This document shows, in pieces, positions 1,369 to 33,463 of a DNA stretch of 64,000 nucleotides (within the stretch, counting starts at the first letter, position 1; each line of letters opens with the position of its first letter). A program made the translations under genes and the position numbers. This DNA is from Podarcis cretensis (taxonomy: Eukaryota), in the NCBI GenBank assembly GCA_951804945.1, contig OX638161.1, positions 48,174,001 to 48,238,000 on the forward strand. Direction: 5' to 3'. Below the pieces are notes generated by a model, which was not told the origin of the DNA, did not search any database, and saw nothing but the letters and a program-made list of their open reading frames with translations.

Positions 1369-1560
1369 ATGTCCACTGCAATGTCCAGCTTGCAGAATCT
1401 GGACCAGATACTGTGAATCCTGGAGTGACTCTGAGACTAATCTGCATTATCACTTGAGATTTTGTCAGTACTGTTGACTGGGAGTGGATCCGACAGGCTC
1501 CTGGAAAAGGACAGAAATGGACAGGCCTGATACATTGGAGTGGCAACTCATGGCATGTTC
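1369..1560 (+). pseudogene. Truncated IGHV family-B pseudo-V exon (FR1-CDR2), copy 1
   Basis: ttag|ATGTCCACTGCAATGTCCAGCTT gives VHCNVQLAESGP..LRLICIIT*, then [11 protein letters not shown]; in-frame TGA, no FR3, no RSS, no leader. Confidence 0.85.
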
Positions 1561-2930
1561 GAGTGGAAGGGGATTGGGGATGCATCAAGCCACCATCAGC
1601 TGATCATACAGCCCTGGCAGCCAGTGAAGATACATGCCCACTGTGGCTGCTGCTGCTTTCCTGCTGACTGAGAAAAGCAGCTCTGCCTCAGTGCCAGGAG
1701 AATGTAGTGCCACAGTGCCTTGAAGTGAAAGCGATCAGCTGCCCTGTTCTCTATCAGTGTGAGGGGAAAGCAACATCTCACAATCAGCTGTCCTGTTTTC
1801 CTTCAGTGTGAGGCATAGCTGCCTGGGGGGGGGGGCACTGGGTGCTGCAGCCCCCACAATATTCCCCATGAAGTGGCTGGGCACCCACATTTTTTGCACC
1901 AGGACTGTACACACAAGGGGGGCGGGGTGCAGAGGGAGCCCACTGGACGCAGCCCAGCATGAGAACGCTGCCTGGGCAACATCCTTGGGTGGCACTGCCC
2001 AGCCGCAGAAACTGGCAGCAACACTGCCTGCTCCCTTATTTTTCCAACCTGGCAAAGTTTTATTACATTTATTACACATAGAACATCAAAGCAACATTAT
2101 TCTATGGTCATGGTACACATGTCAACCTTTGTTTACAAGCTAAAATAGCTGGAAAGTTAAATGTAATAAAAAGAGAAATGTGGTGCTTCTGGCTGAATAC
2201 TGATTATTGCTTCCTGTATAGGTATGTGAAAATAATAGGACAAAATGGGCATGGGGAGGAGAAAGAGCATGCATCTATCTCCACCTCAGATCAAAGAAAA
2301 AGGAGGCTTGACTGCACTCAGTTCCACATGCTGTGGTACAGGTTTACTGAAAGCCCGGTTCCCAAGCAGAGCAAGTGATTAAGGCAGGAGAGTCCAGTCC
2401 ATGAAACGAGGCCACACAAGAACAAGGAAGTTCTGCCCTTAGCAACTCAAGTCCTAGAGGGTATGTGCAAAATGTTTTGAGGGTTCAGTTATGGAGAGAA
2501 ATTGAAAAATGACACTTTGTTTTTTCTAGGGTTAGGAAAAGCATGCCCAGTAGTAACGTTTTATATTGCCTAAGTATATAATAGTTTATTGCTAAGCAAG
2601 TCAATAAAATACAAAGGTATCTATACTAAGAAGAGGGGGGCACCCCTGGTCTTTTCTTTCTGGCAGCATATCAGCACTGAAACCTTTGGAAATGTTTGGA
2701 GAGTGGGGCACTGAACTTTGATCTATTCTTGATGCTTGCCTTCTGGAAGAGGGGCAACAAAAAAGGACCTGCGACTTCTGATCTATATTTTATTGAACCT
2801 TTAAGACAAATCTGCCTTCCTTCCTCCTGCTTTAAACTCATACTTACAGGCCCATTCCAGCCTATAAATCTGGGTAACCATCTCTCAAGTTGTGTCTATT
2901 CTGTATGTACAAGGAACAGTTGCCAAAAGG

Positions 2931-2969
2931 CACAGTGAGAGGATGTGAATCTGAAGGCTGGGAAACAAA
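2931..2969 (+). other. Orphan 23-spacer RSS (no V exon upstream), copy 1
   Basis: CACAGTG 2931-2937, 23-nt spacer AGAGGATGTGAATCTGAAGGCTG, degenerate nonamer GGAAACAAA; spacer and downstream flank match the RSS region of the VH at 26838. Confidence 0.75.
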
Positions 2970-3761
2970 GCCTGTTTGCCTTCTCACCAGAAATAAGTCT
3001 TGAGACAAACTATGTTAAGAGCAAACAGGGGAGATTCATTCAAATATATATAAAAGACTAGGATCTGTAATTCAACCAACCTGAACCAATTAACCAAGTC
3101 ACAATTCACATGCAGGTGAGTTTTAATCAATGGGGTTATACAAGCCGCCCCCCCCCATTTCCTGACCAATTTTACAGCCACATACTGTGATCAGATAGGA
3201 AGGCTAGCACACAGCGAGATGTGGAGCCAACCGTCTCTGCCTAAGGCTGTTCCCACACCCCTAGTAAAGTTCAAACTGCTAATTTTTGGGGGATTAAGCT
3301 GTGCCCCTTCCTTCATTCATCATTTGTGTTGTATTGAGAGTATTATTATTATTGGGTACATGGATTCCTTAGGATGAATGAAAGCTCACTCTTGTATTCA
3401 AATAACAATCACCCGGGGGGTGTGTGGTTCATAAGCTTTACTTACAGCAGTTAACTTTGAAACAAATTTAAAAATATTTACGTGTTAAATAAATAAATAA
3501 ATAAAGGTTGATCTGATAGGGGACGTATCAGGATTCCCTTAAAGATAGCAGGTGTGGCGGGTGCCAGGGACCAACTCCTTTTTTTGTTGAGTCCTAAGGA
3601 AAAGTGCGACATTCTGGGATCAAATCAGGAAACAGGAAGGCTTTTGTAAATTATTGTCGGTACAACAGAACACTTGAAGGGTCAGCAAGTCATGTGTTTG
3701 GTATAAGGCTAAACAGATCTGCTCAGTCAAAGACCAGTGTTGTTCTTTTATCCTGAGCTGC

Positions 3762-6096: not shown

Positions 6097-6290
6097 ATGT
6101 CCACTGCAATGTCCAGCTTGTGGAATCTGGACCAGAGACTGTGAATCCTGGAGTGACTCTGAGACTAATCTGCATTATCACTTGAGATTTTGTCAGTACT
6201 GTTGACTGGGAATGGATCCGACAGGCTCCTGGAAATGAACAGGAATGGATAGGCCTGATACATCGGAGTGGCAACTCATGGCATGTTTGA
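6097..6290 (+). pseudogene. Truncated IGHV family-B pseudo-V exon, copy 2
   Basis: Paralog of 1369-1560; stop at 6183-6185. Confidence 0.85.
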
Positions 6291-7647
6291 GTGGAAGGGG
6301 ATGGGGGATGCATCAAGCCACCATCAGCTGATCATACAGCCCTGGCAGCCAGTGAAGATACATGCCCACTGTGGCTGCTGCTGCTTCCCTGCTGACTGAG
6401 AAAAGCAGCTCTGCCTCAGTGCCAGGAGAAAGTAGTGCCACAGTGCCTTGAAGTGAGAGCGGTCAGCTGCCCTGTTCTCTATCAGCGTGAGGGGAAAGGA
6501 ACACCTCACAATCAGCTGTCCTGTTTTCCTTCAGTGTGAGGCATAGCTGCCATGGGGGGGGCACTGGGTGCTGCAGCCCCCACAATATTCCCCGTGAAGT
6601 GGCTGGGCACCCACATTTTTTTGCACCAGGGCTGCACACACAAGGGGGGCGGGGTGCAGAGAGAGATCACTGGACGCAGCCCAGCATGAGAACGCTGCCT
6701 GGGCAACATCCTTGGGTGGCACTGCCCAGCCGCAGAAAGGAGCAGCAACACTGCCTGCTCCCTTATTTTTTAACCTGGCAAAGTTTTATTACATTTATTA
6801 CATCAAAGCAACATTATTCTATGGTCATGGTACACATGTCAACCTTTGTTTAAAAGCTAAAATCACTGGAAAGTTAAATGTAATTAAAAGAGAAATGTGG
6901 TGCTTCTGGCTGAATACTGATTCTTGCTTCCTGTATAGGTATGTGAAAATAATAGGACAAAATGGGCATGGGGAGGAGAAAGAGCATGCATCTATCTCCA
7001 CCTCAGATCAAAGAAAAAGGAGGCTTGACTGCACTCAGTTCCACATGCTGTGGTACAGGTTTACTGAAAGCCCGGTTCCCAAGCAGAGCAAGTGATTAAG
7101 GCAGGAGAGTCCAGTCCACGAAACGAGGCCACACAAGAACAAGGAAGTTCTGCCCTTAGCAACTCAAGTCCTAGAGGGTATGTGCAAAATGTTTTGAGGG
7201 TTCAGTTATGGAGAGAAATTGAAAAATGACACTTTGTTTTTTATAGGGTTAGGAAAAGCATGCCCAGTAGTAACGTTTTATATTGCATAAGTATATAATA
7301 GTTTATTGCAAACAAGTCAATAAAATACAAATGTATCTATATTAAGAAGAGGGGTGCACCCCTGGTCTTTTCTTTCTGGCAGCATATCAGCACTGAAACC
7401 TTTTGGAAAGGTTTGGAGAGTGGGGCACTGAACTTTGATCTATTCTTGATGCTTGCCATCTGGAAGAGGGGCAACAAAAAAGGATCTGCGACTTCTGATC
7501 TATATTTTATTGAACCTTTAAGACAAATCTGCCTTCCTTCCTCCTGCTTTAAACTCATACTTACAGGCCCATTCCAGCCTATAAATCTGGGTAAAAATCT
7601 CTCAAGTTGTGTCTATTCTGTATGTACAAGGAACAGTTGCCAAAAGG

Positions 7648-7688
7648 CACAGCGAGAGGATGTGAATCTGAAATCTGGGAAAAAAACC
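7648..7688 (+). other. Orphan RSS, copy 2
   Basis: CACAGCG followed by AGAGGATGTGAATCTGAAATCTG and an A-rich tract; duplicate of 2931-2969. Confidence 0.65.
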
Positions 7689-8612
7689 TGTTTGCCTTCT
7701 CACCAGAAATAAGTCTTGAGACAAACTATGTTAAGAGCAAACAGGGGAGATTCATTCAAATATATATAAAAGACTAGGATCTGTAATTCAACCAACCTGA
7801 ACCAATTAACCAAGTCACAATTCACATGCAGGTGAGTTTTAATCAATGGGGTTATACAAGCCGCCCCCCCCCTTTCCTGACCAATTTTACAGCCACATAC
7901 TGTGATCAGATAGGAAGGCTAGCACACAGCGAGATGTGGAGCCAACTGTCTCTGCCTAAGGCTGTTCCCACACCCCTAGTAAAGTTCAAACTGCTAATTT
8001 CTGGGGGATTAAGCTGTGCCCCTTCCTTCATTCATCATTTGTGTTGTATTGAGAGTATTATTATTATTGGGTACATGGATTCCTTAGGATGAATGAAAGC
8101 TCACTCTTGTATTCAAATAACAATCACCCAGGGGGGGGGGGGATGTGGTTCATAAGCTTTACTTACAGCAGTTAACTTTGAAACAAATTTAAAAATAATT
8201 ACGTGTTAAATAAATAAATAAATAAATAAAGGTTGATCTGATAGGGGACGTATCAGGATTCCCTTAAAGATAGCAGGTGTGGCGGGTGCCAGGGACCAAC
8301 TCCTTTTTTTGTTGAGTCCTAAGGAAAAGTGCAACATTCTGGGATCAAATCAGGAAACAGGAAGGCTTTTGTAAATTAATGACGGTACAACAGAACACTT
8401 GAAGGGTCAGCAAGTCATGTGTTTGGTATAAGGCTAAACAGATCTGCTCAGTCAAAGACCAGTGTTGTTCTTTTATCCTGAGCTGCATGTAAATGCAGAG
8501 GCAGCTTCCTCTTTAAAGCAGCAGCACACTCTCTGCCCAGCCTACAGCCAGAGGTACAACTGCTGAACCACTTTCCAGTCAGTTCCTCTCAGAGCAAAAT
8601 CGGGAGATAAAT

Positions 8613-12432: not shown

Positions 12433-12625
12433 ATGTCCACTGCAATGTCCAGCTTGTGGAATCTGGACCAGAGACTGTGAATCCTGGAGTGACTCTGTGA
12501 CTAATCTGTATTATCACTTGAGATTTTGTAAATAATGTTGACTGGGAATGGATCCGACAGGCTCCTGGAAAAGGACAGGAATGGATAGGCCTGATACGTC
12601 TGAGTGGCAGCTCATGGCATGTTCG
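12433..12625 (+). pseudogene. Truncated IGHV family-B pseudo-V exon, copy 3
   Basis: Paralog of 1369 and 6097 fragments; additional stop at 12498-12500. Confidence 0.85.
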
Positions 12626-26388: not shown

Positions 26389-26837
26389 ATGATGTGTTTA
26401 CTTCAATTAGTTTGCTTTTTGGCAATATTCAGAGGTTATTGTTGTGTTGTTATTTCTTTGGCATGTAAGGAGACATGTATAGTTTGCTGATTGATGTTCA
26501 GGAAGCTTTATAATATTGCTTTCTTTACAGGCTTTCAATCAGCAGTTCGACTGCAGGAATCTGGAGGGGACATCAAAAGGCCTGGGGAGTCCCTCCATCT
26601 TTCATGCCAAGGCTCTGGCTTTACCTTCAGCAACTACTTCATGCACTGGGTGAGACAGGCTCCTGGGAAGGGACTGGAATGGGTTGCATGGATACACCAA
26701 AATAGTGGAGAAGTATACTATGCCAGCTCTATGAAAGGGCGCTTCGCCATCTCCAGGAACAACCCATCAAACATGTTGTATCTGCAAATGAACAACCTGA
26801 AACCCGAGGACACGGCTCTTTATTACTGTGCAGGAGA
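26389..26837 (+). CDS. IGHV: IGHV segment, family A subfamily 2, open ORF but nonamer lost
   Basis: Leader 26389-26434 ([15 protein letters not shown]), V exon 26531-26837 ([26 protein letters not shown]); CACAGTG 26838-26844, but AAAAGAAGT at the nonamer position. Confidence 0.9.
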
Positions 26838-27756
26838 CACAGTGAGAGGAAGTGAATCTGAAGGTTGAAAAGAAGTCTTGAGTCAAACTATTTTAAGAGT
26901 AAACGGAGGAGATTCATTAAAATATATCAAAGAATAGTATCTGCATTTCAAACAACCTGAACCAATTAACCAGGGCACAACGCACAGGCAGGTGAGTTTA
27001 ATCAATGGGGTTATAGAAACCCTCCCAATTCCTGACTAATCTGACAGCCACACGCTGTGATCACACAGCAAGGCTGGTCTCGTCTGTAGCACACAGCCAG
27101 AGGTTGAACTAACCTGTCTCTACCTACGTCTGTTCCCACAAACATAGTAAAGCCCACACTGCTAATTTCAGGTGTGTTGAGTTTTGCTCTTTCTCTCATT
27201 CATCATTTGCGTTTTTTTGAGATTATTATTAATATTCGGCACATTGAAGCCTTTGGATGAAGAAAAGCTCACTTTTGTATTGAAATAAAAAAACAACAAC
27301 CCCAAAACAAAAATGTGCTTCAAAAGCTTTACTTACAACACGTAACTTTAAAACAAATTTAAAAATAAATATGGGTTAAATAAATAATTAAATGTTGATC
27401 TGATGGGGGACGTTGAGAAGTTGTATCAGGATTCCCTTAAAGACAGCAGGTGTTTTTTAGTCCTAAGGAAAAGCAGGATATTCTGGGATCAAATCAGGAA
27501 ACAGGAGGGCTTTTGTAAATTCTTGACTGGAAAGCAAAACACTTGAAGGATCAGCAAGTCCTGTGTTTGGTATAAGGCTAAACAGATCTGCTCCATCAAA
27601 GCCCTGTGTTGCTCTTTTATTCTGAGCTGCATGTAAATAAAGAGGCAGATTCCTGTTTAAAGCAGCAGCACACTCTCTGCCCAGCCTACAGCCAGAGGTA
27701 GAACTGCTGAACCACTTCCCAGTCAGTTCCTCTCACAGAAAAATTGGGAGACAAAC

Positions 27757-29931: not shown

Positions 29932-30412
29932 ATGAAGGCCGCCTTTCTTTTCCTGTCTTTGTTAGCAGTGCCGCTGTGTGAGTATCTTCCAGATAAACAT
30001 TTTTTAAAAAATCAAATATTACAGATGCACAAATTGCATGGTAACGAAAGTCTTGTTGTTGTCCTTAGATGTCCACTGCAGTGTTCAAATTGTGGAATCT
30101 GGACCAAGGATAGTGAATTCTGGAGGGTCCCTGAGACTAACCTGCACTCTCAAAAATAATTTCTGGGAATGGGTTATTTCTGGGGATTCTGTCAAAAAAA
30201 ATTTCTGGGAATGGGTCCGATAGGCTCCCGGAAAAGGACTGGAATGGATGGGCCAGATCGACTGGGATAGCAGCAAATGGAGACTGGTCTACAGCCCATA
30301 TCTCCAAGGTCGAATCACTGTGACTGCTGATGCCTCCAGAAATACATATGACCTGGAGCTGAGATCTGTGACAGCTGCAGACACAGCTATATATTATTGT
30401 GCCCGCAGGACA
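29932..30412 (+). pseudogene. IGHV: IGHV family-B pseudogene (nonsense codon plus duplicated CDR1 motif)
   Basis: Leader 29932-29977, V exon from 30069; TAG at 30221-30223; RSS CACAATG 30413-30419, 23 nt, ACAAAAGGG. Confidence 0.93.
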
Positions 30413-31719: not shown

Positions 31720-31855
31720 NNNNNNNNNNNNNNNNNNNNNNNNNNNNNNNNNNNNNNNNNNNNNNNNNNNNNNNNNNNNNNNNNNNNNNNNNNNNNNNNN
31801 NNNNNNNNNNNNNNNNNNNNNNNNNNNNNNNNNNNNNNNNNNNNNNNNNNNNNNN
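31720..31855. other. Assembly gap (N run)
   Basis: 136 N bases. Confidence 1.
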
Positions 31856-32125
31856 AATCTGCCTTCCTGCCTCATACTTTGAATGCATTTTTCCTCCTCA
31901 TAAATACAGGTCCACTATCTCTCAAGCTGTGTCTACTGTGTATGCGCAAAAAACAAAAGTTGCTAACGTGTTTCTCTTTTTATCCTGAGCTATATGTAAA
32001 TGCATGGACAGCTTCCTGTTCCACTGGGTCATAACGCTCTTTGAGCCCCATCTCCATCCAGAACCACAAGCACTGTGTGATTGACATCCCATTCCAAGCC
32101 ACTTTTCCCAAAGCAAGCAAAAGGA

Positions 32126-32588
32126 ATGATTCCTTTACTTCAATTAGTTTGTTTCCTGGCAGTCTTCAGAGGTCAATATTACTATTTAATTATCCTCTGG
32201 CATGCAAGGACACGCTTGCAGTTTATTGATTAGACATGAATCCATAAGATTAGCGCTTTATAATATCTCTTGCTTTACAGGTATTCAATCACAGTACCAA
32301 CTGGAGGTGTCAGGAGGTGACACTAAAAGACCTGGAGAGTCTCTCCGCCTCTCTTGTCGAGCTTCTGGCTTCGACTTCAGCAGCTACTGGATGAGCTGGG
32401 TGCGACAGGCTGCTGGGAAGGGACTAGAATGGGTGGCATGGATACGCTATGATAGTGGAGAAATATACTATGACAACTCTGTGAAAGGGCGCTTCACCAT
32501 CTCCAGAGACAACCCTTCAAACATGCTGTATCTACAAATGAACAGCTTGAAATCAGAGGACACAGCTATGTATTACTGTGCAAGCTTA
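32126..32588 (+). CDS. IGHV: IGHV segment, family A subfamily 2, open ORF, with 12-spacer RSS
   Basis: ATGTAAAT promoter, leader 32126-32171 ([15 protein letters not shown]), V exon 32281-32588 [27 protein letters not shown], both Cys and Trp conserved. Confidence 0.94.
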
Positions 32589-32616
32589 CACAGTGAGAGG
32601 AAGTCTGGCAAAAACA
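32589..32616 (+). other. 12-bp-spacer RSS
   Basis: CACAGTG + AGAGGAAGTCTG (12 nt) + GCAAAAACA (7/9 to ACAAAAACC); at 23-nt spacing the sequence is CTCTTCTTG. Confidence 0.85.
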
Positions 32617-33463
32617 GCCTCTTCTTGCTCATGGCAGTGCTCCAATTTGTTCCTGTAGGACACAACTGATGGTGGAAACGAGGAGCAGGGACATGAGTCA
32701 GGACATTAGAAGATGTTTGGACTTTTGAGACCAAGGCTCCACCTAATTCAGGCTTCTTTCCCCACACTGAATAGTCAGAATCTTCCGGAAAGCACAGCAG
32801 AAGAGGCAGGCAATGCCACCTCTATTCCCCTTGAGCATGAAGGGGAAAGTGCAGGTGGGCATACAGAGTGCATCTGTTCCTAGGTGAGGTGAGGTGAGGC
32901 AAATTGCCATGGCAGGTAGATAGATGTTGCAGCAGCATGTTAGCCAGTTTCAGGGAGAGAGAGGTGGACTGTTTCAATCCACTTTGCTCCAGAGTGCCCC
33001 TGTTTCCAACTTTGCAGTCCCACTTTCCTGCTTTGTGTGTATATGAAGCAATGTAGGACTTATTGTTCCTGGCACACCATCAGTGTAATGGACAGAAGGG
33101 GATAGTCATGTTAATTTGGTTGGAAATAAAACAGACCATTTTCTGACATGATGCCTGAACACTCAGAATTGAGCATAGCTGGGATAAATCAAGATCACTC
33201 TCATTTTTATTTTTCTACTCCACCCCTCATCTGAAAATTACAGGATGGCTCACATTGGTTTCAACCAGGTCCTTGACTAATGGATATTATACAGCCTTGT
33301 AGACGTTTTTGTGGGAGAGGGGGATTACTGGTTTTTTGCTTCTGTTTTGATCATTTATTTGTGCTTCTATCTTGTGAACCATCCTGAAATTTTATGATGA
33401 AGGGCAGTATATATTTTTTTAAAATAGATAGTTAGATTATAGATGATAGAAAGATAGATAGAT

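What the first reader, a model, noticed from the sequence alone, without database searches (positions are those of the whole stretch)
32126..32616. Intact VH gene carrying a 12-bp-spacer RSS: possible D-less direct VH-to-JH joining
Seen: promoter, leader, splice sites and V ORF are intact, and the heptamer CACAGTG is followed after exactly 12 nt (AGAGGAAGTCTG) by GCAAAAACA with its A-tract preserved. Every other VH here with a recognisable nonamer has a 23-nt spacer. Deleting GAATCTGAAGG (11 nt, one helical turn) from the paralogous spacer at 2938-2960 gives the 12-mer up to one substitution, and both are followed by nonamer + GCCT. Established: under the 12/23 rule tetrapod VH(23) pairs with DH(12) and JH is 23. 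Inference: this VH cannot join a DJ but could join JH directly, giving short-CDR3 heavy chains without D, or could recombine by inversion with neighbouring VH 23-RSSs. It could equally be a neutral deletion that silences the gene.
Basis: partly seen in the sequence, partly recalled or inferred. Interest (0 to 1): 0.9.

Follow-up and report, generated by a model that had tools for sequence, protein, structure and literature searches.

The report
Lizard VH gene with 12-spacer RSS
An otherwise intact antibody heavy-chain V gene of a lizard-like reptile really has lost 11 bases from its recombination signal, leaving a clean 12-spacer signal shared by at least three related species. Nothing yet shows the gene is used, and the surrounding evidence points more to slow decay than to a new D-less joining pathway.

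Summary
An intact VH3-like gene has a leader at 32126-32171 and a V exon at 32281-32588. It ends in CACAGTG (32589-32595), a 12-nt spacer and the nonamer GCAAAAACA (32608-32616). All other good VH signals in the window have 23-nt spacers. Independent contigs from a second sample of the same species and from two related species bridge the signal without any indel. It is therefore neither an assembly error nor a private mutation.

The 12-mer is the family's 23-mer minus GAATCTGAAGG, with the junction at 32604|32605.

Use of the gene could not be shown.
- One probable RNA run holds related VH transcripts but nothing specific to this gene.
- All four copies of this RSS lineage in the window are non-canonical.
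- The TTTAAA promoter box conserved in all seven paralogues is lost.
- Framework residue H6 is Val instead of the near-invariant Glu.
- The intact reading frame can be explained by gene-conversion patches from neighbouring functional genes.
- Divergence between orthologues does not reject neutrality.

Best reading: an old spacer deletion removed the gene from normal V-to-DJ joining and left a 12/23-legal but probably little-used partner for JH. Selected D-less joining remains possible, at about 0.25, and could be tested by repertoire sequencing. The scan had noted this same stretch before (s1-837398), not on other DNA.

The parts
31994..32001 (+). Promoter octamer variant ATGTAAAT, shared with all family-A paralogues.
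   Evidence: Alignment A1: these columns are invariant in 8/8 genes.
32020..32030 (+). Site where the conserved TTTAAA (TATA-like) box of the paralogues is replaced by TCCACTGGG.
   Evidence: Alignment A1. Paralogue contigs in X3 diverge from the focal gene at 32020 (loose ends).
32126..32171 (+). Leader exon (ATG to GT donor), 46 nt.
   Evidence: There are no differences in the organism F orthologue.
32172..32280 (+). Leader intron with GT...AG ends.
32281..32588 (+). V exon with an open frame. Cys22, Trp36 and Cys92 are present. It is a mosaic of A2-type sequence (CDR2) and A1-type patches (32327-32386 and 32487-32566).
32574..32580 (+). Embedded heptamer TACTGTG at the FR3 end, the usual VH cryptic RSS.
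   Evidence: Read directly from the sequence. The concept is taken from PMC3526766.
32589..32595 (+). RSS heptamer CACAGTG, a perfect match to consensus.
32596..32607 (+). 12-nt spacer AGAGGAAGTCTG, with the deletion junction between 32604 and 32605.
   Evidence: Loose ends at 32604 in X3 and X5 continue with GAATCTGAAGCC.
32608..32616 (+). RSS nonamer GCAAAAACA. It matches consensus at 7/9 positions, with C2 and the A-tract kept.
26533..26876 (+). Closest paralogue, V26533. Its V frame is intact, its heptamer is at 26838-26844 and its A2-type 23-nt spacer is present, but most of the nonamer was removed by a deletion of about 29 nt.
2931..2969 (+). A2-type 23-RSS (spacer 2938-2960) without a V body, used as the ancestral comparator.
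7648..7687 (+). Second A2-type RSS relic without a V body, with heptamer CACAGCG.

Best explanation
This is a genuine germline IGHV gene (VH3-like, clan III) of a squamate reptile. Its ancestral 23-nt RSS spacer lost the central 11 nt, GAATCTGAAGG. That brought a perfect heptamer and a good nonamer into 12-nt register.

The deletion is old. It is present in a second individual and in two related species or haplotypes whose flanks differ by about 3-4%.

Mechanistic consequence (inferred from the 12/23 rule): the gene can no longer pair with the 12-RSS on the 5' side of a DJ joint, so it is out of the normal repertoire. In IMGT terms this is an 'ORF'-class gene. Its only legal partners are 23-RSSs, meaning JH or other VH genes.

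I judge that it is at most rarely used and is not maintained by selection for D-less joining. Its open frame is kept largely by gene conversion from neighbouring functional genes and by the limited time elapsed.
For: Shown:
- The RSS anatomy and its uniqueness in the window.
- The deletion model against the paralogous spacers.
- Reality and sharing across runs X3, X5 and X12, with all contig gaps accounted for outside the RSS.

For decay or neutrality:
- All four copies of this RSS lineage in the window are non-canonical. Two lack a V body, one lacks the nonamer and one has the 12 spacer.
- V26533 shows that an open V frame persists here even with a broken RSS.
- The TTTAAA box conserved in 7/7 paralogues is lost.
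- H6 is Val where 99% of 116 homologues have Glu and none has Val.
- FR3 is 40/40 identical to A1 genes, while the B and F orthologues keep A2-like bases, which indicates gene conversion.
- The organism F orthologue shows 10 coding changes in 324 nt against 18-22 in 610 nt of non-coding sequence, and 4 synonymous against 4 non-synonymous codon changes. Neutrality is not rejected.
- A probable RNA run with related VH contigs has no contig on this gene's leader, FR1 start or CDR1-CDR2.
- The spacer lacks the consensus C at positions 4 and 7-9 of mouse 12-spacers, and spacer sequence can change activity up to 100-fold (PMC212687).
Against: - The frame, splice sites and RSS core are clean in three taxa.
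- No indel falls in 324 nt of coding sequence, against 4 in 610 nt of flank. About 2 would be expected, giving P of roughly 0.1.
- The deletion is exactly one helical turn.
- A perfect heptamer with a CAAAAAC nonamer core would be expected to be cleavable.
- D-less heavy chains can support all B-cell subsets in mice (PMC1237122).
- The RNA evidence comes from contigs of one small run in another species, so it is weak.
Confidence: 0.6

Rival explanations
1. This is a working D-less joiner. The 12-RSS lets this VH join directly to a JH 23-RSS, either in the germline configuration or downstream of an existing DJ or VDJ joint. That would give heavy chains with short, N-only CDR3 and could rescue alleles by leapfrogging. 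Under this reading the gene contributes detectably to the repertoire and may be selected.
For: - Such a join is 12/23-legal and in convergent orientation if D-J lies downstream.
- The heptamer is perfect and the nonamer core is intact.
- The 12-RSS and the open frame are shared by three taxa.
- No RSS difference is listed between these taxa.
- VH-JH chains are viable in mice (PMC1237122).
- RAG bound at the JH recombination centre scans the VH locus in pro-B cells (PMC11153149).
Against: - No specific transcript was seen, and no matching protein is in the database.
- A promoter box is lost and H6 is Val.
- The sister copies are decaying.
- The reading frame is explained by gene conversion.
- The spacer is far from the 12-spacer consensus.
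- The gene lies more than 220 kb from any D-J cluster if that is downstream.
- The JH spacer length in this genome was not checked.
Confidence: 0.25
2. The 12-RSS mainly pairs with the 23-RSSs of neighbouring VH genes. That would give inversions or hybrid joints within the V cluster, a low-level hazard rather than a function.
For: Seven or more good 23-RSSs in the same orientation lie within 30 kb, and such pairings are 12/23-legal.
Against: RAG is focused on the J-proximal recombination centre (PMC11153149). No rearranged V-V contig or joint appeared in the DNA runs, although contigs cannot show rare events.
Confidence: 0.08
3. The 12-nt spacer is an assembly or sequencing artefact near the gap at 31720-31855.
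For: The gap lies about 870 nt upstream of the RSS.
Against: Contigs from an independent sample of the same species and from two other species span 32534-32883 or more with no indel in the RSS.
Confidence: 0.01

Closest known systems
IMGT 'ORF'-class germline V genes (open reading frame with a defect in the RSS, splice site or regulatory element)
   Same: The V reading frame is intact, the RSS is non-canonical for its locus, and the gene sits among functional genes. The F/ORF/P classes are given in PMC7555362; the definition of ORF is from my own knowledge.
   Different: Here the RSS is not degraded. It has switched cleanly to the other legal spacer class, so it gains a new set of legal partners instead of simply losing function.
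Ig kappa V genes (V-12RSS joining directly to J-23RSS)
   Same: The signal logic is the same: a V gene with a 12-RSS facing J segments with 23-RSSs allows one-step V-J joining (PMC11153149).
   Different: The sequence is VH clan III and lies inside a VH array. The 12-spacer is a truncated VH 23-spacer, not a kappa-type spacer, and no use of it has been shown.
Direct VH-to-JH joining in D-less mice (Koralov et al. 2005, PMC1237122)
   Same: The product would be the same: a heavy chain without a D segment, able to support B-cell development.
   Different: In the mouse the join violates the 12/23 rule (23/23) and is inefficient. Here it would obey the rule.
VH replacement through the embedded cryptic heptamer (PMC3526766, PMC2150985)
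   Same: A 12-like signal associated with a VH gene pairs with a 23-RSS for secondary heavy-chain rearrangement.
   Different: The cryptic signal lies inside FR3, lacks a nonamer and acts on rearranged VDJ joints. This one is a full germline RSS at the normal position.
Canonical squamate VH3 23-RSS
   Same: The heptamer and the first 9 spacer bases are of the same type as the conserved squamate signal, which reads through as '..[14 protein letters not shown]' in gene models from Varanus, Anolis, Gekko, Naja, Crotalus, Podarcis and Salvator.
   Different: The central 11 nt are missing.

Membership tests
IGHV gene (VH clan III / VH3-like) | Split leader, short intron and a V exon with an open frame. 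| tested here: met
IGHV gene (VH clan III / VH3-like) | V-set Ig domain with conserved Cys, Trp and Cys, and best matches to VH3 genes. | tested here: met
   Pfam PF07686 at 42.5 bits against a cut-off of 26. The best hits are Varanus 'IGHV3-33' at 80% and Salvator at 79%. Conserved columns are checked, with two exceptions: H6 Val and P41 Ala.
Functional (IMGT 'F') IGHV | Canonical V-RSS for the IGH locus: heptamer, 23 +/- 1 spacer, nonamer. | tested here: not met
   The spacer is 12 nt, and no nonamer lies at 23 nt, where the sequence is CTCTTCTTG at 32619-32627.
Functional (IMGT 'F') IGHV | Found in rearranged, productive transcripts. | tested here: inconclusive
   One probable RNA run of a related species holds related VH contigs but none on the gene-specific parts. 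Contigs drop rare variants.
12-RSS (recombination signal with 12-nt spacer) | Heptamer beginning CAC, 12 +/- 1 spacer, and an A-rich nonamer with C2 and A5-A7. | tested here: met
   CACAGTG, 12 nt, GCAAAAACA.
12-RSS (recombination signal with 12-nt spacer) | RIC12 score above the threshold of -38.81 (value cited in PMC11153149). | not testable with these tools
   The RIC model parameters are not available here. The only partial check is that the spacer lacks the consensus C at positions 4 and 7-9 (PMC212687).
12-RSS (recombination signal with 12-nt spacer) | Cleaved by RAG1/2 and joined to a 23-RSS partner. | not testable with these tools
   This needs a substrate assay, or detection of signal or coding joints in lymphocyte DNA.
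Direct V-J heavy-chain pathway (works like Ig kappa) | JH segments of this genome carry 23-RSSs in convergent orientation. | not tested
   The D-J region is outside the window. This is assumed from general tetrapod knowledge. Another VH window lies 190 kb further on.

The most novel reading that the evidence does not exclude
A natural IgH locus in which one germline VH gene has switched to a 12-RSS and has been retained across several lizard species. It would make D-less, 12/23-legal VH-to-JH joints with short CDR3. This could work as a kappa-like rescue or editing route that leapfrogs existing DJ or VDJ joints.
Probability: 0.2. Interest if true: 0.8.

Novelty: new variant of a known kind. 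Interest (0 to 1): 0.45.

Why it matters
The 12/23 arrangement V(23)-D(12/12)-J(23) is treated as fixed for tetrapod heavy chains, and it is what forces a D segment into every CDR-H3. A germline VH with a clean 12-RSS, stable over species divergence, is a natural experiment on that rule.

If the gene is used, it would show that a heavy-chain locus can run a light-chain-like one-step pathway beside the normal one. If it is silent, it gives a dated example of how a single helical-turn deletion retires a V gene while gene conversion keeps its frame open. Either answer can be reached with one repertoire data set from this species.

Tried and rejected
- **Assembly artefact:** rejected by bridging contigs from three other runs.
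- **Chance motif:** rejected.
- **Use as a 23-RSS:** there is no nonamer at 23 nt.
- **VH genes of a TCR locus:** not pursued. Squamates lack TCR delta (stated in the preprint read), and the new squamate TCR 'epsilon' V genes are TRBV-like, not VH.
- **Orthologues or transcripts in the protein database:** the V exon alone gave no hit above 80% identity. The read-through tail, residues 85-128 of window:32283-32669, gave nothing (one search was a coordinate slip). These blanks say little.
- **Single-use tools:** Read laying and the look-up of sequencing runs allow one call each, so organisms C, D, E and G and further RNA runs were not examined.
- **Literature:** searches found no description of a natural germline VH with a 12-RSS in the held library. 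Searches were term-format errors.
- **Findings look-ups:** searches by words gave nothing on JH or D in this genome.
- **RIC scoring:** could not be done because the model is not available.
- **Spliced model:** no search or fold was made with the joined leader plus V exon model. The exons were handled by reference, and the joined frame was only checked in a script.
- **Human entries:** four human entries among the hits were left out of the column comparison.

Full report
**What is there.** The window is a dense array of about 20 VH genes and relics, all on the + strand, belonging to three families. The best database matches of the focal V exon are squamate VH3-type genes: Varanus komodoensis at 80% and Salvator merianae at 79%. 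I therefore treat the source as a lizard-like squamate; run and organism names were coded.

The focal gene has these parts:
- a 46-nt leader exon at 32126-32171;
- a GT...AG intron at 32172-32280;
- an open V exon at 32281-32588, which matches Pfam V-set.

It ends in CACAGTG (32589-32595), a 12-nt spacer AGAGGAAGTCTG (32596-32607) and GCAAAAACA (32608-32616). The motif with a 12-nt spacer occurs once in the window, against 0.02 expected. The 23-spacer form occurs nine times, against 0.01 expected. There is no nonamer 23 nt from the heptamer.

**Origin of the 12-mer.** The gene belongs to a sub-lineage I call A2. Its spacer begins AGAGGA, whereas the main A1 genes begin AAAGGA. A2-type signals with full 23-nt spacers lie at 2931-2969, 7648-7687 and 26838-26876.

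Paralogue contigs in two runs match the focal sequence up to 32604 and then continue with GAATCTGAAGCC (loose ends). This places the deletion junction at 32604|32605.

Read-through gene models of VH3 genes from seven squamate genera all translate the signal as '..[14 protein letters not shown]'. The 23-nt spacer, including its sequence, is therefore old and conserved in squamates, and the focal gene is the exception.

**Is it real and how old.** I laid contigs of four runs on 31900-32900.
- A second sample of the same species (X3, record 19) covers 32534-32900 with one substitution and no gaps.
- Organism B (X5, record 26) covers 32455-32883 with 14 gap letters. All are accounted for by a 13-nt deletion at 32844 and a 1-nt insertion at 32760.
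- Organism F (X12, record 8) covers 32486-32894 with 15 gap letters. All are accounted for at 32655, 32699, 32761 and 32833.

None of these contigs has an indel in the RSS. No substitution is listed inside 32589-32616, but 4-5 differences per contig are unlisted, so identity of the RSS is probable rather than proven.

The flanks downstream of the RSS differ from the window by about 3-4% in B and F. The 12-RSS therefore predates that divergence. The assembly-error reading is excluded.

**Evidence on function.** I could not show use. The one probable RNA run (X15, organism F) has contigs only on FR1 and FR3 stretches shared with paralogues, each attached to other V sequences. Depth is zero on the leader, the FR1 start and CDR1-CDR2 of this gene. 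This is weak negative evidence, because contigs drop rare variants. No near-identical protein exists in the protein collection.

Several features point to relaxed constraint:
- **Sister copies.** All four A2 signals in the window are non-canonical in different ways. Two have no V body. V26533 has an open V frame but lost its nonamer to a deletion of about 29 nt. The focal gene has the 12 spacer. V26533 shows that an open frame persists here without a working RSS.
- **Promoter.** The octamer variant is kept, but the TTTAAA box that is invariant in the seven paralogues is replaced. The replacement is also unrepaired in B and F.
- **Framework.** Position H6 is Val. 99% of 116 homologues have Glu there and none has Val. 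Pro41 is Ala. The total count of deviations from conserved columns is, however, no higher than in neighbouring genes.
- **Gene conversion.** The gene is a mosaic. It is A2-like in the promoter, leader, intron and CDR2. It is 36-37/40 identical to A1 genes at 32327-32386 and 39-40/40 identical across 32487-32566. The B and F orthologues keep A2-like bases at three of the six FR3 positions that differ. Gene conversion from functional neighbours can therefore keep the frame open without selection on this gene.
- **Divergence.** Window against organism F gives 10 changes in 324 nt of coding sequence, against 18-22 changes plus four indels in 610 nt of non-coding sequence. Codon changes are four synonymous and four non-synonymous, with no stops. 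The absence of coding indels has P of about 0.1 under neutrality, which is suggestive but not significant.
- **Spacer quality.** The 12-spacer lacks the consensus C at positions 4 and 7-9. Spacer sequence can change activity by up to two orders of magnitude (PMC212687).

Features pointing the other way:
- The deletion is exactly one helical turn.
- The heptamer is perfect and the nonamer keeps C2 and the A-tract.
- The gene is open in three taxa.
- D-less VH-JH chains can support all B-cell subsets in mice (PMC1237122).
- RAG bound at the JH-based recombination centre scans the whole VH locus in pro-B cells (PMC11153149). A convergent 12-RSS in the array is thus a plausible substrate for any JH 23-RSS still present.

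**Mechanism, with shown and inferred steps marked.**
- Shown: a 23-RSS became a 12-RSS through an 11-nt deletion that is old and fixed or common.
- Inferred from the 12/23 rule: the gene cannot join the 5' 12-RSS of a DJ joint. It can legally pair only with 23-RSSs, meaning JH by deletion or other VH genes by inversion.
- Inferred from context: usage is low and unselected. Another VH-bearing window lies 190 kb beyond this one (an unchecked note). If D-J lies downstream, the gene is more than 220 kb from it and would depend on long-range scanning.
- My odds: about 0.6 essentially retired 'ORF'-class gene; about 0.25 detectable direct V-JH joining, of which perhaps half is selected; under 0.1 mainly V-V events; about 0.01 artefact.

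**Comparison with what is known.** The nearest class is the IMGT 'ORF' V gene (classes in PMC7555362; definition from my own knowledge). The difference is that this signal is not degraded but converted to the other legal class. It would work like a V-kappa gene, yet it is not one by sequence or location. The held literature gave no natural germline VH with a 12-RSS. That is not proof that none has been described. I rate it a new variant of a known kind.

**Limits.**
- RIC scoring, the D-J region of this genome and further species could not be examined.
- Four human protein entries were left out of comparisons.
- The joined leader plus V model was not sent to any search or fold.

Noticed in passing
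window 26533-26876: V26533 is the closest paralogue. It has an intact leader, splice sites and V frame, a perfect heptamer and a 23-nt spacer. Most of its nonamer and about 29 nt behind it are deleted relative to the relics at 2931 and 7648. It is a second 'ORF'-class gene.
   Followed up: partly
window 2840-3060 and 7557-7780: Two near-identical relics in which an old V-like 3' end is fused, about 16 nt after a TGT-ACA-AGG motif, to an A2-type heptamer, 23-spacer and nonamer. The whole A2 gene body, about 620 nt, is missing. The upstream partner of the fusion is homologous to 31900-31960, just before the focal promoter.
   Followed up: partly
window 32327-32386 and 32487-32566: Gene-conversion-like patches. 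The focal V is 36-40/40 identical to A1-family genes in these stretches but A2-like elsewhere. The orthologues in organisms B and F carry different, partly A2-like bases at 32516, 32520-21, 32534 and 32545-46.
   Followed up: yes
window 31900-32900 (runs X5, X12): Organism B is 0.4% diverged from the window upstream of 32442 (2 differences in 543 nt) but about 3-4% diverged downstream of 32455. Most of its downstream differences are shared with organism F. This suggests two old haplotype classes, or a recombination or introgression breakpoint inside the V exon.
   Followed up: no
proteins P0018, P0025, P0026, P0031, P0040, P0062, P0085, P0091 and window A1 genes: Annotated squamate VH3 gene models read through the RSS, and all give '..DTV(R/K)GSESEA(R/K)QKP'. 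The 23-nt spacer sequence itself is conserved from geckos to snakes and in this window's A1 family.
   Followed up: partly
window 31994-32001 and paralogous sites: All eight family-A promoters carry ATGTAAAT rather than the classical ATGCAAAT octamer, inside a conserved block TTTTATCCTGAGCT..ATGTAAAT.
   Followed up: no
window 1371-1538, 6099-6260, 12435-12599, 30071-30403: VH4-like family members that are truncated, carry in-frame stops, or in one case (30071) have an internal duplication of the CDR1 region. These pseudogenes recur at the same place in a tandem block of about 4.7 kb.
   Followed up: no
   Followed up: no
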